This document shows, one piece after another, positions 31,151-62,882 of a stretch of DNA of 64,000 bases. The stretch is from Chrysemys picta bellii (lineage: Eukaryota): assembly GCF_011386835.1 (NCBI RefSeq), contig NC_088791.1, positions 90,954,001 through 91,018,000 on the forward strand, written 5' to 3'. The notes under the pieces were generated by a model. The model worked only from the letters and a program-made list of their open reading frames with translations, searched no databases and was not told where the DNA came from. The position numbers and the translations under genes are program-made. Positions within the stretch are counted from its first letter, which is position 1. Each line of letters begins with the position of its first letter.

Positions 31151-32090
31151 ACTGGTTGCTTTGCACACATTCTTTTAATAAAGTAAGAGTGACCATCATA
31201 TTTTAAAGATTAGTGTAGATGATTTTCAGCCAACCAATTGGGTGGACCACTAATAACTTGACTATGGACCGCTAGTGGTCTCCATCTCATGGATTGAGAG
31301 TCATTGACCACCAATATGGTTACAGGTATAAATTTGCAAAAATCTGCATAGGCTTACATAAACCTACAATCAATAGACATATTACAGGTCAATCATTGCA
31401 GTTAATATACTTTTTTCTCTCTAACATATCACTGTGTGAGAACTGATAGAATTCTGTCCCTAATGTATGCTTGTACTCTGTTCCTTTCATTGGGATAAGA
31501 GGCAAGGTTCTCTTATGGATTGGTAATTGGCTAAAAGATAGGAAACAAAGGGTAGGGATAAATGGGCAGTTTTCAGAATGGAGAGAGGTACTTAGTGGTG
31601 TCCCCCAGGGATCTGTACTGGGCCCAGTCCCATTTAACATATTCATAAACGATCTGGAAAAAGGGGTAAACAATGAGGTGGTAAAATTTGCAGATGATAC
31701 AAAACTACTCAAGATAGGTAAGTCCCAGGCGGACTGTGAAGAGCTACAAAAGGATCTCACAAAACTGGGTGACTGGGCAACAAAATGGCAGATGAAATTT
31801 CATGTTGATAAATGCAAAGTAATGCACATTGGAAAACATAATCCTAACTATACATATACAGTGATGGGGCCTAAATTAGCTGTTACCACTCAAGAAAGAG
31901 ATGTTGGAGTCATTGTGGATAGTTCTCTGAAAACATCCACTCAATGTGCAGCAGCAGTCAAAAAAAGCAAACAATGTTGGGAATCATTAGCCAAAGGGTC
32001 AAGTATCAGAGGGGTAGCCGTGTTAGTCTGAATCTGTAAAAAGCAACAGAGGGTCCTGTGGCACCTTTGAGACTAACAGAAGTACTGGGA

Positions 32091-32131
32091 GCATAAGCTT
32101 TCGTGGGTAAGAACCTCACTTCTTCAGATGC
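32091..32131 (-). ncRNA. Mirror-image minimal hammerhead ribozyme motif in the left arm
   Basis: Exact reverse complement of 32231-32271. Confidence 0.7.
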
Positions 32132-32230
32132 AAGTAATGGAAATCTCCAGAGGCAGGTATATATCAGTGTGGAGATAACCTCGTTATCTCCACACTGATA
32201 TATACCTGCCTCTGGAGATTTCCATTACTT

Positions 32231-32271
32231 GCATCTGAAGAAGTGAGGTTCTTACCCACGAAAGCTTATGC
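32231..32271 (+). ncRNA. Minimal hammerhead ribozyme motif (Penelope-associated)
   Basis: Stem I GCAU/AUGC, core CUGAAGA (32235-41), stem II GUG-A-GGU-UCUU-ACC-CAC, GAAA (32260-63), and a short palindromic stem III AGCU. Confidence 0.7.
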
Positions 32272-34244
32272 TCCCAGTACTTCTGTTAGTCTCAAAGGTG
32301 CCACAGGACCCTCTGTTGCTATTAGCAAAGGGATGGATAAAGACAGAAAATATCATATTGCCTCTATATAAATCCATTGTACGCCCACATCTTGAATACT
32401 GTGTGCAAATGTGGTCGCCCCATCTCAAAAAAGCTATATTGGAATTGGAAAAGGTTCAGAAAAGGGCAACAAAAATGATTAGGGGTATAGAACGGCTTCC
32501 GTACGAGGAGAGAGTAATAAAACTGAGACTTTTCAGTTTGGAAAAGAGGTGACTAAGGGGGGATAAAATCATGAGTGGTATAGAGAAAGTAAATAAGGAA
32601 GTGTTATTTACTCTCTCTCATAATACAAGAACAAGGGGCCACCAAATGAAATTAATAGGTAGCAGGTTTAAAACAAACACAAGAAAGTATTTTTTCGCAC
32701 AACACACTGTCAGCCTCTGGAACTCCTTGTCAGAGGGCGTTGTGAAGGCCAATACTATAACGGGGTTCCAAAGGGACCTAGATAGATTCATAGAAGATAG
32801 GTCCATCAATGGCTATTAGCCAGGATGGGCAGGAATGGTGTCCCTAGCCTGTGTTTGCCAGAAACTGGGATTGGGTGACAGGGCATGGATCACTTGATGA
32901 TAACCTGTCTGTTCAATCCCTTTGGGGAACCTGCCATTGGCCACCGTCAGAGGACGGGATACTGGGCTTGATGGACCTTTGGTCTGACCCAGTATGGCCG
33001 TTCTTATGTTCTTATTGCATTTAATATGCAAAATCAACAGTATACATGGAACAATACACTTCCTTTGCAGAATAAAGCAAGGGGGCAAATCTAAGGTTGG
33101 GTGTAATTTCGCTCAGGGTGACAGTGAGTAATAAAGGAACATGTAGCAATAAGGGTACTGGTTGGATCATTTAATTCATTGTTACCCAAATTTTTGAAAG
33201 CTGAGGCCCACCCCCGCAGGAAAATGAAACTAGTTGTCACCTTGCCCACCTCATTGTGTTCTTAAAGGCCTACTAATATTTTAGAAAATTTAAATTGTAT
33301 TTTAAGATGTATTCTTAAATTCTCACTTTAAGGAATTGTGTTTTCAGTATTGGATGTTAAGAAATAGTTGAATACAAGTCATTTTTTAAAAATTAAAAGT
33401 GTTATATTTCAAGCTTACAACGATATTACTTTACTAAATAATTACCATTCAAAATGTTATGTTCTTTCTAACAAAACCTCTCACACGGGTTGGCTCTAGT
33501 GTGGTCCTTTGTCTTGTCTTCCCTTCAGTGGGGCTCAGATGCCATGCTGGGATTCTTGAGCTGGAGCTGCTTCTTGACTTGAGGGCAAAAAATAAGTGGT
33601 CGTGTTTCCCAAACTCACCTACTTGTGGCACCAAAACGAGCAGTCACAGAGTAAACTGTGTAGAATTTCATTCATATTTTGAGCAATGAAATAATTAACA
33701 AAGTTGACATGAATGGGGCAGTTCACACCTCAGCTGTTGTTTCAAATTCTGCAAACCTAGCCAGACAGAACCGGTGCATCTTGTCTTCATGAGTCTGCAA
33801 ATATTCTGTATCAGTAGCAGTTAGCCGTGAACTATGCCATTTATTCAAATGAGATGTTAACTCTAAGGATGATAATTAAAGTCAACATTAACTGAAAAGT
33901 CACCATAAATAATATATTCTTCACTTGCTGCCTACTGTGTTCTTGTACAAATGAGTCACAATAGTCAGAGTCCATAGTTTAAAGAAAAGTTGAATGCAAA
34001 AAAAAGTCTTCCTTACATTACACATACAGTTGTGTTAAATGTAACTAGCCTCTGATATGCTCCCTCTTGAATTCTCCTTTGACATAGTTACAGCTAATGC
34101 AAGTCAGAGCATCCCCATACCACCATTTTTAGCACAGCTGTCTTGGGCTGTGCTTACATCAACATATTCTGGGAAAATCTGGGCAACTACCCTATACTAG
34201 TGCAGTAATTGATAAGTAGAGCAGAGAGGTGTCTGGCTGTATGT

Positions 34245-39836: not shown

Positions 39837-42800
39837 TTCTTCTTTGAGTGCTTGCTCATATCGATTCCAATTAGATGTGTGCATGCCACGTGCACAGTTG
39901 TAGGAAAGTTTTTCCCCTAGCAGCACCCGTCGGGTTGGCTGTGGAGCCCCCTGGAGTGGCACCTTTGTGGTGCTCAATATATGACCCTGCTGACCTGGTA
40001 CCTCCTCAGTTCCTTCTCATCGCCAGTGACGGTCGCTGGAACTGTGGCATGTTGCTTTGCAAGCTGTCCACATTTCCCTAGCTTCTGTTTGGACTTTTTG
40101 TATTTTGTAGTTGTTTAGTTCTTGGTTAGTTCTTAGTTGTTATAGTTAGTAGTTAGCTAGCTGTTGGCCTGGGGGGTTTACCCTCTACCCCGACTGAATT
40201 CTCCTTGCGGGACTTACGTGCCTAAGTCCCAGTGGTTCAAGCCCTGCAAGTCCTACGAGAAGCCCATCCCAACGGGTGACCCCCCACAGCGCTTGCTTAA
40301 AGTGTCTGGGGGAAGCACATCAAGCAGACAAGTGCAGGATTTATAAAGGGTTTCACCCCAGAACAAAAAAGGAGCAAGACTTTCGCCTCAACAGCGCCTT
40401 GTGGAGATGGCACTCAGACCGCAACCTTCATCGGCGCTGCAAGGCCCGGTACCGAGCTCATTGGTGCACAGTGCCCCAGCAGCAGTGGTAGAAGCAGCAC
40501 TGCGGAAGGACTCTGGGAGACACCCATGGCACTGTTGCTCCCCAGCGCCAAAACCAGCAGGATCAACCCGGCATCGGTGCCATTCACCAATGCAGAAGCG
40601 GCGGAAGCAGGGGAGAAGTGGATCTCAGACTCAGAGACCCATCCCTTTGGAGCTGGCCAGTGGGGCACGTCCTCGAGAGGTGCACCCAGTGCCGAAGTCT
40701 TTGGAGCCGGCACCGTTGACTTCGGCTCTGCAAGGAGTTGAGTCCGGTGCTGTTGGACTCCCCCCGAGCCAGGTCATCAAGGAGGTGGAATTGCCCTCCA
40801 CCCCGGACACCTTTGAGGCCGCAAGGCACCTCATTGCCATGACAGCACCGCGGTCCCTGGTCCTTTGCGCCAAGCCCCTGGTACTGCATCGTGTGGCACC
40901 GTCTCGGGGCAAACTGGTGATGCTCTGTCTCTCAGCACTGCTGCTCCCAATAGTGATGCCGATCCTCGCATCGATCTCTGTTGTGCAGCAGGTCCCGCTC
41001 CTGGCACCGGTCAGCGTCCCCGCACAGATCCCAATCTCGACACTGCTCCCCTAGCCTCGCAACACTGCTCATTAATCCAGGTCCACTTGGCACTGCCCTG
41101 GCCATCACAGTCCCGGTCCCCATCTTCGGACTTGGAGACAGGGTCTAGATACTCAGAGCGGGACCAGCAGAACAACAAGCCCCAGCGCCTAAGTCAAAGG
41201 ACGCCAAGCACCTAGATTTATTTGGGCGTAAAGTGTATTCTATAGGGGGGTTGCAACTCAGGATTGCCAACCAGCACACAATTCTGAGTCGAAACAGCTT
41301 CAACTCCTTGAACTCGATGCCCAAGTTTAAGGAGCTGGTGCCAACAGAGTCTGGGGAGGAGTTTAGAGCGATAGTGGAGGAGGGCAAGGTGGTGGCACGG
41401 ACCTCTTTACAGGCCTCACTGGATGCTGCGGACTCAGTGGTGCGCACCTTGTCCTCCCAAATCGCTATGAGGCGTAGCTCATGGCTGCAGGCTTCTGGAC
41501 TCTTTCCCCCCCTGCCCCCTCCCCAGGTTCAACAGACCATGCAGGATCTGCCTTTTGATGGGGCAGGTCTGTTTGCAGAGCAAACTGACTCTAGGCTGCA
41601 TAGCCTAAAGGACTCCAGGGCTACCATGAAATCCTTGGGTATGCACACCCCGGCAACCCAACGCAAACATTTCAAGCCTCAGCAGCAGTGCTCCTATCCT
41701 CCTCGGCCAAGGCAGGACTTTTATAGGAGAAGGGGCAGGAATGGCAGATGAAAGCCTTCCAACCCCTCGGGCAGGGCCAGGGTCCGACTAAACCATCGTC
41801 GGGTTCCAAGGAGTCCTTTTGAAGGTGTGCTCGAGGACGGCGCACCAGCCTCAATTCCGGATCCTTCCCCATCTTTCTTGAATGTCCCACTTCTATCATG
41901 CTTGGTCCCAAATAACTTCGGACCGCTGGGTTCTCCATATGGTAGAAGTGGGATATTTTCTCTCCAGTTCTGCTCCTGCCCTCCCTCCCGCCCTCCTTTC
42001 CCATCCCTTTTCTCACGAGCAACTCCTTATCCAGGAGGTGCAGGCGCTCCTTGCCATGGACGTGGTGGAGGAGGTTCCTCAGCGGCAAGGGATTCTGTAC
42101 CTGATACTTCCTAATCCCCAAAGCCAAAGGGGAGGGAGGGGGTCTCGGACCCATTCTAGATTTGCGAGGACTCAACAAGTTCATGGTAAAGTTGAAGTTC
42201 TGCATGGTCTCCGTGGGCACAATTATCCCTTCTCTGGATCGGAGAGACTGGTACGCCGCCCTCGACATGAAAGACACGTACTTCCATATAGCTATTCGGC
42301 CTGTACACAGGCGATTCCTACTCCTCGTGGTCAACCACAAACATCAATTCACAGTCCTTCCATTTGGCCTCTCAACAGCCCCCCAAGTGTTCACCAAGTG
42401 CATGTTGGTTGTGGCCGCTTTCCCGTTGGAGGCAGGTGCAGGTATACCCCTACCTCAATGACTGGCTGCTAAGGGGCCATACCAGGGGGCAGGTGGAGTC
42501 TCAAATCCAATTGGTCAGGTCCACATTCGAGAGACTAGGTGTTCTCCTCAACTCAAGGAAGTCAACCTTGGAACCGACCCAAAGAATTGAATTCATTGGG
42601 GCCGTGTTGGACTCGGTTCAGGCAAGGACATTTTTGCCAGGGTCCCGATTCCAAGCCATCACAGAGATCGTTCAAGACCTCCAGCAATACCTGACCACTT
42701 CAGCATGGGGATGCCTGAGTCTCCTTGGCCACATGGCAGCCTGCACTTACATCACCCGGCACTCCAAATGAAGCTCAGGCCTCTACAGGCTTGGCTCGCT

Positions 42801-45255: not shown

Positions 45256-46050
45256 ATCTATTAGAACCAAGCAAGCTTTGGCTGGGAGTCTAGGTTGGGG
45301 AATACAGTTATTTTCTTGGAGTGCTGCTTCTCATTCATGCGTCATCATAGGGATGCTTGGGTATAGTGAACAGAGATGTATTTGGGTGAGTTGTTGACTG
45401 TTCCTCTGCAGTTTCCCAGATAATTTTGATTTTAGGGCCCTTTTTGATCTTATCTCATTTACATCTGGACTGACTTCTAACAGAGGATGTTTGGAGGGAG
45501 GCTTCTGGGTCTCCGGATATTTTTTCTTACTATAGGTCTCAATAATTTAAGATAATTTATATAATTTTTGCCATTAGTTCAGACTTCCACAATAGTAACA
45601 AAATACAGTTACTCCACTCTGAGCGTCTCCTGGCCTGTAGGGGATAATTTAGGGGTGGGAGTCAGTGTTACTGAAATAGGAGTCGTTCTCCCACTTGAAT
45701 TGGTTTAGCGAAATGTTTAGCCCTTCTGGGGGGCACAACCCAATTGCTGACAGTTGGAAGGAGCCTTTATAAAATGCATTAATGTTGGAATGCTGCTGTA
45801 ACTGCGTAGGGAGTGATGAACACTTTTGACTTCTCAGCACAAATGGGAATCCTGTTTCCTCAGTTACCGGGGTGGCTAAGGTGTTAAGCATTAATAGAGC
45901 TGGATGGTAGGAGAGGTGTTAAATTTGAATTACTGCTAAATATTATAGTTTAATTTTACTGATGATATGACTGGGAGACGTAAATTTGCTAACTTTTTTT
46001 CCCTTTTTTTCCAGGAGGGCTATCGAGGGGTCACTCTGGTGCTGAACAGC

Positions 46051-49000
46051 ATGCAGTCCTTTCGGGAGCAAAGCAGTTACCACGGAAACCAGCAGAGCTA
46101 CCCACAGGAAGTGCACGGGGCATCCCGGCTAGAAGAATTTAGCCCCCGTCAGCAGACCCAGATGTTCCAGAGCTTTGGAGGAGGTGCTGGCAGTGGGCGC
46201 CGGGGAGCAACAGGAGCATCTGCAGCAATGGCTGGTGAGAGCTCTGGGCACCAGAGCTACCAAGGTTTTAGAAAAGAAGCAGGAGAGTTTTACTACATGG
46301 CCTCCAACAAGGATACAGTGGCAGCAGGTGGGCAGCAGCCACCTCAGCGCAGGCCGTCTGGACCAGTGCAGAGCTATGGGCCACCCCAAGGAAGCAATTT
46401 TGGGAGCCAGTACGGGAGCGAGGGACATGTGGGCCAGTTCCAAACACAGCATTCAGCCCTTGGAGGTGTATCTCACTATCAGCAGGATTATACTGGTCCC
46501 TTCTCTCCAGGGAGTGCCCAGTATCAGCAGCAGGCTTCCAGCCAGCAGCAGCAGGTGCAACAGCTGAGACAGCAGCTCTATCAATCCCATCAGCCTTTAC
46601 CACAGGCATCCAGCCAGCCTGCGTCTAGCACCTCCCACTTGCAGCCAATGCAGCGTCCATCTGCCCTGCCTTCCTCTGCTTCTGGGTACCAGTTACGAGT
46701 GGGTCAATTCAGCCAACACTATCAACCCCCTGCTTCTTCCTCTTCCTCTTTCCCCTCCCCACAGCGTTTTGGGCAGTCTGGGCAGAACTATGATGGCAGT
46801 TACAGTGTGAATTCTGGTTCACAGTATGAAAGCCATGCTGTAGGTTCTAATTCACAGGGATATGGGACTCAATCTAATTACAACTTTCAGACTCAGCCAA
46901 TAAAAAGTTTTGACCAGTCTAAGATGCCCCAGGGTGGGCAGCAGGGGCAGCAGCAACAGCACCCCTCACAGCATGTAATGCAGTACTCAAATGCTGCCAC
47001 CAAGCTATCTCTTCAAAGTCAAGTGGGACAGTACAGCCAAGCTGAAGTCCCTGTGAGATCACCCATGCAGTTCCATCAGAACTTCAGTCCTATATCCAAC
47101 CCATCTCCAGCTGCCTCAGTGGTCCAGTCTCCAAGCTGCAGCTCTACCCCATCACCCCTCATGCCAAGTGGGGAAAACCTCCAGTGTGGGCAAGGCAATA
47201 TGTCGATAGGCTCTAGAAATCGAATTTTACAGATGATGCCTCAGCTTAGCCCAACACCATCCATGATGCCGAGCCCCAATGCTCATGGTGGAGGATTCAA
47301 GGGATTTGGGCTGGAAGGACTTCAGGAGAAGAGACTTACAGATCCAGGGCTGAGCAGCCTAAGTGCTTTAAGCTCTCAAGTGGCCAACCTTCCTAACACA
47401 GTCCAGCACATGTTACTTTCAGATGCCTTGGCACCTCAGAAAAAAAGTTCCAAAAGGTCATCGTCGTCTAAAAAAGCTGACAGTTGCACCAACTCAGAAG
47501 GCTCCTCCCAAGCAGAGGAGCAGCTTAAGTCTCCCCTGGCAGAGTCCCTCGATGGCGGCTGCTCTAGCAGTTCAGAGGACCATGGAGAGAGGGTCAGACA
47601 ACTGAGTGGCCAGAGCACTAGTTCTGACACTATCTACAATCGGGGTAACTTAGAGAGATCCAACTTGTCACCAGCACAAGGCTCTCAGAATGAGCCAGCC
47701 AAACTCAGTACCAGCCCTACAGTTAGGGAAGATGTGGGTTCCCCGGGTGAAAAGGAAGTCCTGATAGCAGTGGATGCCACCCCAAAAGTGAACGAAAAGA
47801 CAGTTGGGGTGATAGTCTCTCGGGAGGCCATGACAGGCCGAGTAGAAAAATCAGGCGGGCAGGATAAATCCTCACAAGACGATGCTCCTCCAGCTACCCA
47901 AGCGCCTCCTGGTGCCAGTGGAATAAAAGAAACTGGGCAGGTGTTACCACAGTCAGAGCCTCAAGGAGGGAGCAAAGGGAGTAAGAGTGGGGAAAACAAT
48001 ACTAACCACAATGGAGAGGGAAACAGCCAGCCTGGCCATGCAATCATTGGCTCAAGTTTTCCTGGCAGAACAGAACCTTCCAAATCGCCTGGCAGTTTGA
48101 GGTACAGCTATAAGGACAACCTTGGGGCTGGCATGCAGAGAAATATTGGTGGCTTTCCTCAGTATCCTTCAGAAAAAGGGGATTTTCCAGGGCATAGTGA
48201 GCGAAAGGGCAGGAATGAGAAGTTTCCCAGTCTTCTGCAGGAGGTCTTGCAGGGTTATCACCACCACCCAGACAGAAGATATGCTAGGAATGCACAAGAA
48301 CATCCAGGCATGGCTGGAAGCCTGGAAGGAGCCATGAGGCCCAACATTCTAATTAGTCAAACCAATGAATTAACCAATAGGAGTCTCCTAAATAAAAGCA
48401 TAGGGTCTCTCCTGGAAAGTCCTCACTGGGGCCCCTGGGATAGGAAATCCAGTGGCACAGCTCCGGAGATAAAACAGATCAATCTGGCTGACTATCCTAT
48501 CCCTAGAAAGTTTGAGATAGAGTCACAGTCTTCAGCCCATGAAGGGGGAACACTCTCAGAGAGAAGATCCGTGATCTGTGACATATCTCCATTAAGGCAG
48601 CTTGTCAGAGATCCTGGGCCTCACCCAATGGGTCACATAGGTGCTGAGGCCAGAAGTGGGAGGAGTGAACGTCTCACTCCTGGTTTAGGCCAGTCAGTCA
48701 TCCTCCCTGGTGGCCTGGTGTCCATGGAAACCAAGTTGAAGTCTCATAGTGGGCAAATAAAAGAGGAAGATTTTGAACAGGCCAAGACCTCAGTCAATCT
48801 CAACAGTAAAAAATCAGGAGACCATTGTCATCCTGCCAATGTTAAGCATGAGTCTTTCCGAGGCAGTGCCAACCCTGGAGCTGCAGCCCCTGATTCTACT
48901 CCAGACTACGTCTCCCAGCAGGACAGCAGATCAACACAGCTAAGACGAGCACCTGGAAGAATGGGAAGCAGCAGAGAGGGCATGAGGGGTAAATCACCTT

Positions 49001-51657
49001 CTCAATATCAGGATCTGGCTGACAAACTGAAGATGTCACCAGGCAGGAGCAGAGGCCCAGGAACGGACTTCCACCACATGAATCCACACATGACACTGTC
49101 TGAGAGGGTCAGCAGGGGTTCTTTGCATTCTCCCTTCCCTCAGAACTCTGAAGGCTCATCTTTGGCTTCGGCATATCACACAAACACTAGGTCTCATGCT
49201 TTTGGTGACCCTAACCAAAGTTTGAATTCCCAGTATCATTACAAAAGGCAGATATACCACCAGCAGCAAGAAGAATACAAAGATTGGAGCAGCAGTTCTG
49301 CACAGGGTGTGATTGCTGCAGCTCAGCACAGGCAGGAAGGGGCAAGGAAGAGTCCAAGACAACAGCAGTTCCTTGAGAGAGTAAGGAGTCCCTTGAAAAA
49401 TGACAAGGAAGCAATGATGTACATCCAGGCTAGCTCTTACCATGATACTGGAAGCCAAGAAGCTGGGCGCTGTCTCATAGGGAGTGATGGTACACAAAAC
49501 AAATGCACCGAATTAAAACATGGTGTCCAGAAGATGCAGCAACAGGAATCTGGTTGGGATCTCTCCCGACAGATCTCTCCTGCCAAGAACAGTGGGCCTC
49601 TAGGAGCAACCAATCAGAAAAGGTTTTGCTCTCAAGATAGTGATGGGCATAGGCGGGAGGAATCTGCGGATTTGCCCAAACCTAGTAATGCGATGCTGAG
49701 GCTCCCTAGCCAAGAAGACCAGTCTCCTCAAAACCCCTTAATTATGAGGAGGAGGGTCCGTTCTTTCATTTCTCCTATTCCCAGCAAAAGACAGTCGCAG
49801 GATATGAAGAACAGTGGCACAGAAGATAAAGGGCGACTGCTTCTCCCCTCAAAGGAAGGAACTGACAAAGCATTCAACTCCTATGCACATTCATCTCTAA
49901 GCCAAGATGCTGGCAAGCCACTCCCAAAGGGAGACTCCTCCAAGGATCTCCAAAGTCCTGACAACAGGAATTGCCCTGCTGTTTCCCTCACAAGCCCGGC
50001 TAAGACCAAAATATTGCCGCCACGGAAGGGGCGGGGATTGAAACTGGAAGCTATTGTTCAAAAGATTACATCCCCCAACATCAGGAGAAGTGTTTCCTCC
50101 AACAGTGCTGAAACTGGTGCAGATGCAGTCACCCTTGACGACATCCTGTCCCTCAAATGTGGACCACCTGAAGGTGGGAGTTTGGTAAGTCATGGACCAG
50201 AGACAGAAAAGAGAAAAGGGGAGACTGTGTCAGATCCAGTGGGGCAAGTGAGCCAGGAATTGACTAGTGAAACATCTCTGCCAAGATCTTCAGAAGAGTG
50301 GCACAGCAGTGGGGATGACAAAGTCAAGAAGGAGACGCCTGAAGTTGCTAGTGTCAGTAAAGAGGTATCTGGGGCCAATGTTGCCACACCACCTTCACAG
50401 AAGTCTGGTAGTCAAGGACGATTAGATGGATCCTTAAGTGGAGCTGGAACTCTGATGTTTCCTGACTCAAAAACAGTTTCTCCTTCCAGTATGTTGATTT
50501 CTGAACCAAACCCAAAGTCTGAAGAAAAAGATGGAGATATGACAAATATTTCACCTAAGCCAGATGGCTTCCCTCCAAAGGGATACTTCCCCTCTGGAAA
50601 GAAAAAAGGGAGGCCTATTGGTAGCGTAAACAAGCAGAAGAAGCAGCAGCAGCAGCAGCCGCCACCACCACCACCTCCTCCACCAGTGCCACTACCACCA
50701 CAGCCATCAGAAGGGACAAGAGGTGGAGAACCAAAACCTAAGAGACAAAGGAGGGAGAGGAGGAAACCTGCAGCACAACCACGAAAGCGGAAAACTAGAC
50801 GGGCCACTCCAATTGTGGAACCTCAAGAACCAGAGATCAAGCTGAAGTATGCCACCCAGTCGCTGGATAAAACTGACACCAAGAACAAGTCCTTTTTCCC
50901 GTACATTCATGTGATAAACAAGTGTGAGATAGGCGCTGTGTGCACAATCATCAATGCAGAGGAAGAAGAGCAGAACAAGTTGGTGAGGGGCCGAAAGGGA
51001 CAAAGGTCACTGACACCCCCTCCTAGCAACACTGAGAGCAAAGTTCTGCCCACCTCAACTTTCATGCTGCAGGGCCCCGTGATAACTGAGTCTTCTGTCT
51101 TGGGGCATCTGGTTTGCTGCCTGTGTGGAAAGTGGGCCAGTTACCGCAACATGGGAGACCTCTTTGGGCCTTTCTATCCCCAGGATTATGCAGCTACGCT
51201 GCCCAAAAACCCGCCTCCCAAGAGGGCCTCAGAAATGCAAAGCAAGGTCAAGGTACGACACAAAAGTGCTTCTAATGGCTCCAAGACCGATACAGAAGAG
51301 GAAGAAGAACAGCAACAACAGAAAGAACAGAGAAGCCTGGCTGCCCACCCCCGCTTTAAGAGGCGGCATCGCTCTGAGGATTGTGGTGGGGCCTCTCGGT
51401 CACTTTCAAGGGGAGCTGCTTGTAAGAAAGCAACCACTGAGGGTGGCAGTGGCAGTGAAAAGACTCCCTTGGACTTAANNNNNNNNNNNNNNNNNNNNNN
51501 NNNNNNNNNNNNNNNNNNNNNNNNNNNNNNNNNNNNNNNNNNNNNNNNNNNNNNNNNNNNNNNNNNNNNNNNNNNNNNNNNNNNNNNNNNNNNNNNNNNN
51601 NNNNNNNNNNNNNNNNNNTATGGGCTGCAGGAAGCTGTGGAAATAGCAAGAGAGATG
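46051..51657 (+). CDS. TCF20: Transcription factor 20 (SPBP), giant first coding exon; CDS partial and continues in exons not found in this window
   Basis: Starts [23 protein letters not shown], the TCF20 N-terminus. It contains Q/S-rich regions, an AT-hook KKKGRPIGS (50599-50625), basic NLS clusters, [21 protein letters not shown] and [13 protein letters not shown]. Acceptor: branch GCTAAC, polypyrimidine tract, CAG| at 46014, so the exon starts at 46015 with 36 nt of UTR. Phase-0 donor ATG|GTGAGT at 51657. The frame is open across the N gap. Confidence 0.98.
51479..51618. other. Assembly gap (140 N) inside the TCF20 exon
   Basis: N run directly visible. The reading frame is preserved across it. 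Confidence 0.99.
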
Positions 51658-52185
51658 GTGAGTACCAGAATTTACTATGTATTGATGGATGAAAGGTTTT
51701 TCCTTTTGCAACCATAGAATTTTTCCTTCCCTGTAATATCCTTTTTTTCTTTCTGCTATACCTCAAGCATCCATGTTTCCTCTATATAAATCTTCAGTAG
51801 TTCCCTTTTGATAAAGGGTAAAAATCCTACTTTAGGTGGTCACCTAGTGAAATTTAGTTTGGGCTGAGATTTTTAAAGCCACCTGAAGGATTTCGATGCT
51901 CTAGTACCTATTAATTTTAATGAGAATTAGTTGTCTGAGGGATTTGTATATCCATGAAGATCTCAGCCTTGTTCTTTATCCAGTTTCTATTAAATACTGA
52001 TTCATATCCTACAACCACAAAAGTGTAGGTGTGGCCTTTGTAGTAGGGAGGCCATTTAGACTAGCTAGTGGTGCTGCAAGCCTGGATCAAGGTGTATTGT
52101 GTGTGTTGATGAGCTTCAAAAAGAGTACTGTCTAGTCCTTATTGGCCAGAAAGATAGTTGCCAGGATGTGAGGACTTGGGGATGT

Positions 52186-62480: not shown

Positions 62481-62813
62481 CACATCTTTTGTCGATTTCA
62501 CTCTTGATTAGTTGGTGGCTCCCTGTGCAAATAAACTTACATTATGAGATACACAGTGACCAGACAGATAAGCAGGAATGCTAGAAATCTGTTTGGCTCA
62601 GAGAAATGCAAAATTTGTGTTTTTACAGAGAATCTTTAGTTTTTACATTTTGTGAAAAAAAAATATATATATTTACTATTAACTAAATTTTACTGTAAGT
62701 ACCTCTGTCACTTATTCAATATGCGCAGCTTCCCCCTCTTGTGGTTGATTTTTGATTGTGCTTTAAATTTACATAGCTAAACATACTCCAGTAAACTGCT
62801 TCTGGTGATAAAG

Positions 62814-62882
62814 TATCGGGGGTAGCCGTGTTAGTCTGTATCTACAAAAACAACAAGGAGTCTGGTGGCACCTTAAAGACTA
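62814..62882. mobile_element. 69-bp Penelope-like terminal insertion
   Basis: TATCGGGGGTAGCCGTGTTAGTCTGTATC...GGTGGCACCTTAAAGACTA is homologous to 32004-32074. It is flanked by TCTGGTGATAAAG (62801-13) and TCTAGTGATAAAG (62883-95). Confidence 0.8.

What the first reader, a model, noticed from the sequence alone, without database searches (positions are those of the whole stretch)
32091..32271. Back-to-back intact minimal hammerhead ribozyme motifs, one per strand, inside TCF20 intron 1
Seen: on the + strand, 32231-32271 reads GCAU-CUGAAGA-A-GUG(A)GGU[UCUU]ACC CAC-GAAA-GC-UU-AUGC. This has the hammerhead core CUGANGA...GAAA, a closable stem II, stem I GCAU/AUGC and only a 4-nt palindromic stem III (AGCU), with a predicted cleavage triplet CUU at 32265-67. 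An exact copy lies on the minus strand at 32091-32131. Established: Penelope-like retroelements carry such minimal type I hammerheads, whose palindromic stem III allows cleavage as dimers. Inference: one copy is in the sense direction of TCF20 pre-mRNA, so it could act as an intronic self-cleaving site. Alternatively it is silenced because the upstream arm base-pairs with it, forming a built-in antisense switch. Transcription from either strand would include one ribozyme.
Basis: partly seen in the sequence, partly recalled or inferred. Interest (0 to 1): 0.85.

Follow-up and report, generated by a model that had tools for sequence, protein, structure and literature searches.

The report
Fold-back Penelope retroelement with hammerhead motifs
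The two mirror-image hammerhead ribozyme motifs are real, but they are the two arms of one young fold-back insertion of a very abundant turtle Penelope-like retrotransposon, a known kind of element, and here each ribozyme is locked against its own antisense copy.

Summary
The 41-nt motif lies exactly at 32231-32271 (+) and 32131-32091 (-).

What it is:
- The genome is the painted turtle, Chrysemys picta bellii.
- The motifs sit in the two 138-nt, 100% identical arms of a 322-bp head-to-head insertion (31999-32320).
- The insertion has a 12/13-bp target-site duplication, a 43-nt "tail" on one side only and no poly(A). It landed inside a CR1 LINE fragment, 13.7 kb upstream of the TCF20 start codon.

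Evidence for the ribozyme class:
- The motif has every published hallmark of the Penelope-like-element (PLE) minimal type-I hammerhead.
- Copies from four turtle species show compensatory changes in helices I and II.
- In loggerhead turtle the homologous segment lies 256 nt downstream of a reverse-transcriptase plus GIY-YIG open reading frame (ORF).
- More than 32,000 short-read contigs per DNA run lie on the 551-bp stretch laid (the element plus its CR1 flanks).
- Rfam models give no hit, but they also miss a canonical-core relative.

Function at this locus:
- A role in TCF20 pre-mRNA is unlikely. There is one sense motif per transcript, always made after its perfect antisense, and forming it costs about 71 kcal/mol.
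- Published monomers of this class are inactive.

The kind is already known (Cervera & de la Peña 2014). This scan holds 53 similar notes on this genome.

The parts
31986..31998 (.). Left target-site duplication, ATTAGCCAAAGGG, which is CR1 sequence
   Evidence: Read directly. Uninterrupted CR1 copies in short-read contigs read ...CCATTAGGAAAGGGAT... once (loose ends).
31999..32041 (-). 43-nt 3'-terminal 'tail' of the Penelope-like element. It is present on this side only and contains the conserved GGGTAGCCGTGTTAGTCTG block (sense strand: CAGACTAACACGGCTACCC).
   Evidence: The same end is seen in a second copy at 62811-62882. Depth is highest here. A one-sided 30-40 bp tail is a PLE hallmark (PMC8557442, PMC11167929).
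32042..32179 (-). Left arm: the sense copy of the PLE 3' segment on the minus strand, continuous with the tail. This is the primary 5'-truncated copy.
   Evidence: 138 nt, 100% identical to the right arm as a reverse complement.
32091..32131 (-). Minimal type-I hammerhead motif on the minus strand. The predicted cut lies between 32095 and 32094.
   Evidence: The family covariance model R1 scores it 60.2 bits, E 2.4e-13 (the + strand arm copy was a seed).
32180..32182 (.). 3-nt spacer (CTC) at the centre of the palindrome
32183..32320 (+). Right arm: the inverted 5' duplicate of the same PLE segment, without the tail
32231..32271 (+). Minimal type-I hammerhead motif on the TCF20 sense strand. 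Helix I is GCAU/AUGC and the core is CUGAAGA plus an extra A. Helix II is GUG(A)GGU-UCUU-ACCCAC. The motif continues with GAA, helix III AGCU and H17 = U. The predicted cut lies between 32267 and 32268.
32321..32332 (.). Right target-site duplication, ATTAGCAAAGGG
31471..32031 (+). Host CR1-type LINE reverse-transcriptase ORF, interrupted by the insertion
   Evidence: ORF. Pfam RVT_1 at E 9.5e-16.
62811..62882 (-). A second, independent, strongly 5'-truncated copy of the same PLE 3' end. It has the tail plus about 35 nt and no hammerhead, and is flanked by its own duplication, (C)TGGTGATAAAG / (C)TAGTGATAAAG.

Best explanation
The feature is a young, 322-bp head-to-head ('fold-back') insertion of the 3'-terminal (pseudo-LTR) segment of a high-copy Penelope-like retrotransposon (PLE) of the painted turtle. 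It landed in a CR1 LINE fragment 13.7 kb upstream of the TCF20 start codon.

How the pair arose. PLE insertions are made by target-primed reverse transcription that starts inside the 3' region of the RNA. They are usually 5'-truncated and often carry an inverted 5'-truncated copy next to them. Here the sense copy (minus strand, 32179 to 31999, with the 43-nt tail) and its inverted duplicate (32183-32320) were created in one event. This is inferred from the perfect arm identity, the single target-site duplication and the 3-nt centre.

Why there are two motifs. Every PLE 3' segment carries the family's minimal type-I hammerhead, so the fold-back automatically places one motif on each strand. The motif is a genuine member of the PLE minimal-hammerhead class. 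Whatever role it has belongs to the retroelement's own RNA, not to the host gene. Its published activity is weak: it depends on dimers or protein assistance, and it is dispensable for insertion in vitro.

What happens in a TCF20 pre-mRNA. The insert would form a 138-bp perfect hairpin that locks the ribozyme. The monomer also lacks a closable helix III and has no sense partner nearby. Self-cleavage at this locus is therefore not expected (inferred, not assayed).
For: Anatomy:
- Exact arms, 3-nt centre, one-sided 43-nt tail, 12/13-bp duplication of a CR1 target and no poly(A).
- A second 5'-truncated copy shares the same 3' end and has its own duplication.

Family size and truncation:
- More than 32,000 contigs per DNA run lie on the 551-bp stretch laid (element plus CR1 flanks).
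- Depth rises towards the tail end.
- Many other copies are fold-backs with different turning points.

Link to PLEs:
- In Caretta, locus L003 64670-67115 has inverted 132-nt arms.
- These arms enclose an RVT_1 ORF (E 9.7e-11) and a GIY-YIG ORF (E 1.7e-4).
- A homologous hammerhead follows 256 nt after the stop, in the same orientation.

Ribozyme class:
- An unpaired A lies between A9 and G10.1, and the G10.1-C11.1 pair is present.
- Helix II is long, with 6 bp. Helix I is short, with 4 bp.
- AGCU is palindromic and H17 = U. These are exactly the features listed in PMC4209133.

Covariation:
- In 14 copies from four turtle species, 94.6% of cells are paired and 5 pairs change on both sides.
- 0 of 500 shuffles reach this, and slid controls pair only 18-47%.
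- A second family replaces helix I GCAU/AUGC with AGAC/GUCU and has a different, fully paired helix II.

Lock:
- The palindrome's minimum free energy (MFE) is -303 kcal/mol.
- Hammerhead pair probabilities are 1e-15 or less.
- Enforcing helices I and II costs 71 kcal/mol.

Literature:
- Inverted 5'-truncated copies and a one-sided 30-40 bp tail are typical of PLEs (PMC8557442).
- The anole PLE protein cuts and extends both DNA strands and initiates internally. Its hammerhead mutants still insert, and no RNA-seq reads end at the cut site (PMC11167929).
- Single minimal hammerheads show no cleavage, and dimers cleave only weakly (PMC4209133).
Against: - No Rfam hammerhead model matches, even at E <= 10. 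The same is true for a CUGAUGA-core relative, so this reflects the models rather than the motif.
- No cleavage assay or RNA end mapping was possible. All available runs are assembled contigs, and no listed holder is on record as RNA.
- The reverse-transcriptase/endonuclease link was shown in another turtle (72.9-76% identity over the terminal segment), not for the identical Chrysemys subfamily.
- The covariation rests on a few subfamily-level changes, not on many independent events.
- The GIY-YIG score (22.2 bits) is just under Pfam's cut-off (22.6).
Confidence: 0.88

Rival explanations
1. The right-arm hammerhead acts as a self-cleaving site in TCF20 pre-mRNA, or the palindrome acts as an antisense switch that regulates such cleavage.
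For: The catalytic core is intact and CpG sites are undecayed. The motif lies on the TCF20 sense strand, 13.7 kb upstream of the ATG. Intronic hammerheads conserved in amniotes exist (HH9/HH10; established knowledge, cited in PMC4209133).
Against: - There is one sense motif per transcript, and no other motif in the 64 kb.
- Single motifs of this class are inactive in vitro.
- The sense motif is always transcribed after its perfect complement.
- Pair probabilities are 1e-15 or less and the penalty is 71 kcal/mol.
- The pair is a by-product of a mechanism that made many similar fold-backs.
- Ancient orthologous fold-backs near TCF20 have mutated cores.
- The arms are identical, so the insertion is too young to have been shaped by host selection.
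Confidence: 0.03
2. The insert matters to the host as a long double-stranded RNA rather than as a ribozyme. The 138-bp perfect intronic hairpin would be a substrate for ADAR editing or Dicer-type processing, giving small RNAs against the PLE family.
For: The hairpin is perfect, with a predicted energy of about -290 to -303 kcal/mol. The palindrome scores on many microRNA-precursor models on structure alone. The family is very abundant, so hairpin-derived small RNAs would have many targets.
Against: All microRNA matches are far below their gathering scores, except mir-16 by 0.9 bit in the lax mode only, and the gathering-mode scan of the window is empty. No small-RNA or editing data could be examined. 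Transcription through this site is itself unverified.
Confidence: 0.06
3. The palindrome is an artefact, either an assembly or long-read fold-back chimera, or a fold-back DNA transposon or MITE rather than a retroelement.
For: Perfect palindromes with tiny spacers are a known artefact of some library preparations (general knowledge). The arms are 100% identical.
Against: - A target-site duplication of CR1 sequence flanks the insert.
- One short-read run holds 100% of the sampled 31-mers of the element (X7).
- Fold-backs of the same family with variable turning points occur in short-read contigs and in independent assemblies of other turtles, some of them orthologous across four species.
- Variable arm length, a one-sided tail, the 5'-truncation gradient and the linked reverse-transcriptase/GIY-YIG ORF argue against a DNA transposon.
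Confidence: 0.03

Closest known systems
Minimal hammerhead ribozymes (min-HHRs) of metazoan Penelope-like elements (Cervera & de la Peña 2014, PMC4209133)
   Same: It is a type-I motif with no real helix III, only a palindromic A-G-C-U. It has an unpaired nucleotide between A9 and G10.1, a G10.1-C11.1 pair, a long helix II and a 4-bp helix I. It lies in the terminal repeat of a reverse-transcriptase/GIY-YIG element. It occurs mostly as solo or opposite-strand pairs 100-700 bp apart. The paper already reports such motifs in 'turtle and snakes'.
   Different: Nothing essential differs. This copy has a bulged A in helix II, also described for the Drosophila virilis variant, and N7 = A. The two motifs are only 99 nt apart, in a perfect palindrome.
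Poseidon PLE of Anolis carolinensis (PAc; Frangieh et al. 2024, PMC11167929)
   Same: It is a reptile PLE. The hammerhead lies roughly 90 nt upstream of the internal reverse-transcription start. There is an optional 30-40-nt tail between two start sites. The protein nicks and extends both DNA strands, which can explain head-to-head copies, and it prefers to cut at ATT. The duplication here starts with ATT.
   Different: In PAc the ORF starts inside the hammerhead (the AUG of CUGAUGA). Here N7 = A, so no AUG lies there. Clade membership of the turtle element was not determined.
Rfam Hammerhead_1 (RF00163) and the conserved intronic hammerheads HH9 and HH10 (RF02275, RF02277)
   Same: They share the catalytic core and type-I topology. 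HH9 and HH10 are intronic and thought to derive from retroelements.
   Different: No match to any Rfam hammerhead model at E <= 10. There is no helix III hairpin. The insertion is a young copy of a very abundant repeat family (identical arms), which is the opposite of an ultraconserved single-copy element.
Dimeric satellite hammerheads and non-LTR retrozymes (newt satellite 2, Schistosoma Sm-alpha; PMC7229834; bioRxiv 10.64898/2026.07.22.740005)
   Same: They have a short palindromic helix III that needs two tandem sense copies to form the active dimer, and they are related to PLE terminal repeats.
   Different: Those are head-to-tail tandem repeats that yield circular RNAs. Here the two copies are head-to-head, so a transcript has one sense and one antisense copy and cannot form the dimer.

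Membership tests
Hammerhead ribozyme, PLE minimal type-I class | Conserved core C3-U4-G5-A6-N7-G8-A9 ... G12-A13-A14, A15.1-U16.1, and H17 not G | tested here: met
   CUGAAGA at 32235-41, GAA at 32260-62, A15.1 at 32263, U16.1 at 32266 and U17 at 32267. In alignment A1, most other core positions are invariant across 14 copies. N7 and H17 vary only within permitted bases, U4 is C in a subfamily, and single copies show CpG decay at G12.
Hammerhead ribozyme, PLE minimal type-I class | Unpaired nucleotide between A9 and G10.1, plus a G10.1-C11.1 pair | tested here: met
   A at 32242. G32243 pairs with C32259. The extra A is invariant in all 14 aligned copies. The feature is listed in PMC4209133.
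Hammerhead ribozyme, PLE minimal type-I class | Helices I and II supported by compensatory change | tested here: met
   A1: 94.6% of cells paired, 5 pairs with changes on both sides, 0 of 500 shuffles as high, slid controls 18-47%. A2 includes a second family (AGAC/GUCU; GAGCU/AGCUC): 91.2% paired, covariation score 0.535 against 0.214. Caveat: the changes are few and at subfamily level, and A2 is fitted to the model.
Hammerhead ribozyme, PLE minimal type-I class | Palindromic 15.2-16.2 / minimal helix III that permits a dimeric active form | tested here: met
   AGCU at 32263-66, invariant in A1. It cannot close as a hairpin in a monomer.
Hammerhead ribozyme, PLE minimal type-I class | Self-cleavage 3' of H17 | not testable with these tools
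   Only assembled contigs were available. Published relatives: the monomer is inactive and dimers are weak; the anole PLE hammerhead is protein-assisted and no in vivo ends were seen.
Rfam hammerhead families (RF00163, RF00008, RF02275-7) | Covariance-model match at or near the gathering score | tested here: not met
   No hammerhead hit at E <= 10 on 551 nt or 96 nt, or in the gathering scan. There is also none for a CUGAUGA-core relative in Caretta.
Penelope-like retroelement (EN+ PLE) | Reverse transcriptase plus C-terminal GIY-YIG endonuclease ORF linked to the repeat | tested here: met
   Shown in a related Caretta copy, not at this locus. L003 ORFs: 65288-65944 hits RVT_1 at E 9.7e-11, and 66290-66769 hits GIY-YIG at E 1.7e-4 (22.2 bits against a 22.6 cut-off). 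The hammerhead at 67025-67064 follows 256 nt after the stop. The terminal segment is 72.9-76% identical to the window's arm.
Penelope-like retroelement (EN+ PLE) | 5'-truncated insertions, an adjacent inverted 5'-truncated copy, a one-sided 30-40-bp tail, a target-site duplication and no poly(A) | tested here: met
   Arms 32042-32179 / 32183-32320, tail 31999-32041, and a 12/13-bp duplication. There is a truncation gradient, and fold-back joints occur in other copies. The features are as described in PMC8557442.
microRNA precursor (mir-16, mir-1756, mir-26 and others) | Match above the gathering score with sequence conservation of the mature arm | tested here: not met
   The hits are symmetric on both strands and driven by the perfect hairpin. 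All are far below gathering except mir-16 (37.4 against 36.5) in the lax mode only. The gathering-mode scan returned nothing.

The most novel reading that the evidence does not exclude
The perfect 138-bp hairpin, transcribed within a TCF20 5' intron, might be processed into small RNAs, or occasionally opened (for example by ADAR editing or helicases) so that the sense hammerhead cleaves the pre-mRNA. That would give the host a PLE-derived regulatory or anti-PLE small-RNA locus. Separately, many fold-back copies in this genome turn 0-4 nt upstream of the hammerhead. This may mark a discrete 5' end of the PLE template RNA, a mechanistic clue that I did not find in the PLE papers read here.
Probability: 0.05. 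Interest if true: 0.55.

Novelty: already known. Interest (0 to 1): 0.15.

Why it matters
This explains a striking pattern as an ordinary product of Penelope-like retrotransposition, so it should not be counted as a candidate host ribozyme. The same applies to the 53 similar notes this scan holds on the same genome.

Three practical lessons follow:
- Rfam hammerhead models are blind to this class. A family-specific model (R1 here) or a descriptor search is needed.
- A back-to-back motif pair is diagnostic of a PLE fold-back insertion, not of two-strand function.
- The turtle copies give clean covariation support for the PLE minimal hammerhead fold.

They also add hints that catalysis is not needed for PLE spread. 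A U4-to-C core variant sits in both arms of several insertions, and cores have decayed in old copies.

Tried and rejected
- Rfam scans gave no hammerhead family hit. The only hits were spurious microRNA-precursor matches to the palindrome, rejected as structure-only matches below threshold.
- An exact-pattern scan of metagenome contigs for the conserved 3' block GGGTAGCCGTGTTAGTCTG found nothing.
- The supplement of PMC4209133, which might show the published turtle motif, is not held.
- I tried to date the insertion through orthologous loci. The TCF20 loci fetched from Gopherus, Caretta and Chelydra start 10 kb upstream of the coding start and do not reach the site, which is 14 kb upstream. 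Two look-ups (Malaclemys, Pelodiscus) were not on record.
- RNA evidence was inconclusive. No listed holder is on record as RNA, and all runs laid were contigs, so ends and strand cannot be read. In one run guessed to be RNA, exact 74-77-nt contigs run unbroken across both predicted cut sites, but its nature is unknown.
- I first read BLAST alignments that start at the hammerhead edge in other species as true 5' ends. The alignment shows those copies continue upstream, so only the joints support a turning-point hot spot.
- A short ORF starts at the AUG just after the cut site. It stops after 23 codons and was not pursued.

Full report
**1. The observation**

GCATCTGAAGAAGTGAGGTTCTTACCCACGAAAGCTTATGC lies at 32231-32271 on the + strand, and its exact copy lies on the - strand at 32131-32091.

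In standard hammerhead numbering:
- The core C3-A9 is 32235-32241, and an extra A follows at 32242.
- Helix II is GUG(A)GGU / ACCCAC with loop UCUU, and G12-A14 is 32260-32262.
- Helix III is only the palindrome A-G-C-U (32263-32266), and H17 is U32267.

A minimal-hammerhead descriptor of my own finds only these two sites in the 64 kb and none in 200 shuffles.

The two motifs are not independent. They are mirror images within one palindrome, whose arms 32042-32179 and 32183-32320 are 100% identical.

**2. Where it is**

The 1916-residue ORF at 45967-51717 (+) is TCF20. It is 100% identical over residues 30-500 to Chrysemys picta bellii TCF20. The window is 100% identical to the painted-turtle chromosome record fetched as L001.

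The coding start maps to window 46051, so the element is 13.7 kb upstream, with + as the sense strand. A position in a 5'-UTR intron is plausible, because GC-rich islands lie at 16-18 kb and 24-26 kb. It could not be checked without an exon annotation. The masked N run inside the exon was left alone.

**3. Anatomy of the insert**

The palindrome interrupts a CR1-type LINE reverse-transcriptase ORF (31471-32031; Pfam RVT_1, E 9.5e-16). The CR1 target ATTAG(G/C)AAAGGG occurs once in uninterrupted CR1 copies (loose ends). Here it is duplicated as ATTAGCCAAAGGG (31986-31998) and ATTAGCAAAGGG (32321-32332).

The insert is therefore 31999-32320, 322 bp:
- a 43-nt segment present only on the left (31999-32041);
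- the left arm, a 3-nt centre and the right arm;
- no poly(A).

A second, independent copy at 62811-62882 has the same terminal 43 nt plus about 35 nt and its own target duplication. This shows that the left end is the constant end, the 3' end of a retroelement read on the minus strand. That orientation is also the sense orientation of the hammerhead.

**4. It is one of very many**

I laid short-read contigs of four runs on 31900-32450. More than 32,000 contigs per DNA run lie on this stretch, which includes the CR1 flanks. Summed depth is highest over the tail end and falls towards the palindrome centre, as expected for 5' truncation.

Hundreds of joints show other genomic copies that are also fold-backs with different turning points. 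The best supported cluster at 32130-32135 joined to 32227-32231, with 0-4 extra letters. That is 0-4 nt upstream of the hammerhead.

The element's 31-mers are also held nearly complete by runs of many other coded organisms. This scan holds 53 notes with the same theme in this genome.

**5. Link to Penelope-like elements (PLEs)**

TCF20 loci from Gopherus, Caretta (two assemblies) and Chelydra contain a dozen homologous segments, and Chrysemys L001 contains three more.

In Caretta, L003 64670-67115 has two inverted 132-nt arms. These enclose an ORF with RVT_1 (E 9.7e-11) and an ORF with GIY-YIG (E 1.7e-4, 22.2 bits against a cut-off of 22.6). The hammerhead at 67025-67064 lies 256 nt after the stop, in the same orientation. 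Reverse transcriptase plus a C-terminal GIY-YIG endonuclease is the signature of EN+ PLEs.

The anatomy at our locus matches the published description of PLE insertions: strong 5' truncation, an adjacent inverted 5'-truncated copy, and a 30-40-bp tail at one end only (PMC8557442).

It also matches the biochemistry of the anole PLE (PMC11167929):
- The protein cuts and extends both DNA strands.
- Reverse transcription starts internally at two sites, and the interval between them is the tail.
- The start site lies roughly 85-92 nt downstream of the hammerhead cut.
- The protein prefers to cut at ATT.

Here the insert ends about 95 nt after the predicted cut, and the duplication begins with ATT.

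**6. Is the motif a hammerhead?**

Rfam gives no hammerhead hit at E <= 10, even on 96 nt. However, a relative with the canonical CUGAUGA core in a Caretta fold-back copy is also missed. The models, which expect a helix III hairpin, are blind to this class.

Cervera & de la Peña (PMC4209133) needed a dedicated descriptor for the same reason. [quoted passage not shown] All of these are present here. They also report such motifs in turtle and snakes, and note pairs on opposite strands 100-700 bp apart.

Independent support comes from covariation. In 14 copies from four turtle species (alignment A1):
- Most core positions, the extra A and AGCU are invariant.
- N7 (A/C/U) and H17 (U/C) vary only where the rules allow.
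- The distal helix II pairs switch G-C to A-U and U-A to C-G.
- 94.6% of cells are paired, five pairs change on both sides, 0 of 500 shuffles reach this, and slid controls pair only 18-47%.

A family model built from A1 found further copies. These include a second family in which helix I is AGAC/GUCU instead of GCAU/AUGC, and helix II is GAGCU/AGCUC.

The caveat is that these are few, subfamily-level changes.

**7. What it does at this locus**

A transcript of either strand contains one sense motif and its perfect complement. By symmetry, the sense motif is always in the downstream arm, so the antisense is made first.

- The predicted hairpin energy is about -290 to -303 kcal/mol.
- The hammerhead fold alone is worth -8.5 kcal/mol.
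- Hammerhead pair probabilities in context are 1e-15 or less.
- Forcing helices I and II costs 71 kcal/mol.

There is no second sense copy in the 64 kb to form the dimer. Published single motifs of this class show no cleavage.

An ancient fold-back of the second family lies about 4 kb downstream of the TCF20 coding range. It is orthologous in Chrysemys, Gopherus, Caretta and Chelydra. Its cores have decayed differently in each arm, for example GCAA in one and AAAA in the other in place of GAAA. Inserted copies therefore drift neutrally.

I conclude that the motif is a passenger of the retroelement and is locked here. This is inference, because no cleavage or RNA-end data could be obtained.

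**8. Age**

There are zero differences between the two 138-nt arms, intact CpGs and a single 1-nt difference between the duplications. This indicates a recent insertion. I could not date it through orthologous sites.

**9. Verdict**

The attribution to Penelope-like minimal hammerheads is correct. The functional inference about TCF20 is not supported. The kind is already described in the literature, including for turtles, and the locus is one of very many. Interest is low. The by-products listed under 'noticed in passing' are the more useful leads.

Noticed in passing
window 32119-32135 joined to 32227-32249 (other genomic copies laid on this locus): The best-supported joints in short-read contigs are fold-back copies that turn 0-4 nt upstream of the hammerhead, with 0-4 extra letters, rather than at the predicted cleavage site. 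This suggests a discrete 5' end of the PLE template RNA, or a strong stop, at the hammerhead's 5' edge. It gives no sign that hammerhead-cleaved RNA is the template.
   Followed up: partly
L003:21833-21872, 42044-42083/42473-42512, 64721-64760/67025-67064; L001:69576-69615: A core variant, CCGAUGA / CCGAAGA (U4 to C), is present in both arms of at least two Caretta fold-backs, including the copy that carries the reverse-transcriptase and GIY-YIG ORFs. It is also in one further solo Caretta copy and one Chrysemys copy. Where both arms carry it, the change was already in the template RNA, which hints that hammerhead catalysis is dispensable for PLE spread.
   Followed up: partly
L004:48980-49592, against L003:48974-48986: A 5'-truncated PLE copy of about 612 bp, with a 13-bp target duplication, is present in one Caretta caretta assembly and absent from the other. 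This may be an insertion polymorphism and so a sign of recent PLE activity in loggerhead turtles.
   Followed up: partly
L001:86759-87059; L003:88527-88821; L005:76485-76740; L002 about 93600-93870: An ancient fold-back insertion of a second PLE hammerhead family (helix I AGAC/GUCU) lies about 4 kb downstream of the TCF20 coding range. It is orthologous in Chrysemys, Caretta, Chelydra and Gopherus, and its catalytic cores have mutated differently in the two arms.
   Followed up: partly
window 62811-62882 (-): A second, about 70-bp, strongly 5'-truncated copy of the same PLE 3' end, with its own target-site duplication. It has no hammerhead.
   Followed up: yes
window 32138-32224, both strands: The palindrome gives symmetric, structure-only matches to many Rfam microRNA-precursor models (mir-1756, mir-26 and others; mir-16 is 0.9 bit above gathering in the lax mode only). 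Perfect fold-backs of this family will generate false microRNA calls.
   Followed up: yes
window 41233-42771 (+): Several overlapping ORFs look like a degraded DIRS-type retroelement, for example ...RIEFIGAVLDS.... This was judged by eye only and not searched.
   Followed up: no
window 32259-32260 (C11.1-G12 CpG): Across family copies the only variable sites at 5% or more inside the hammerhead are the CpG transitions C>T (about 15%) and G>A (about 11%). These destroy C11.1 or the catalytic G12, which is ordinary methyl-CpG decay of inserted copies.
   Followed up: partly
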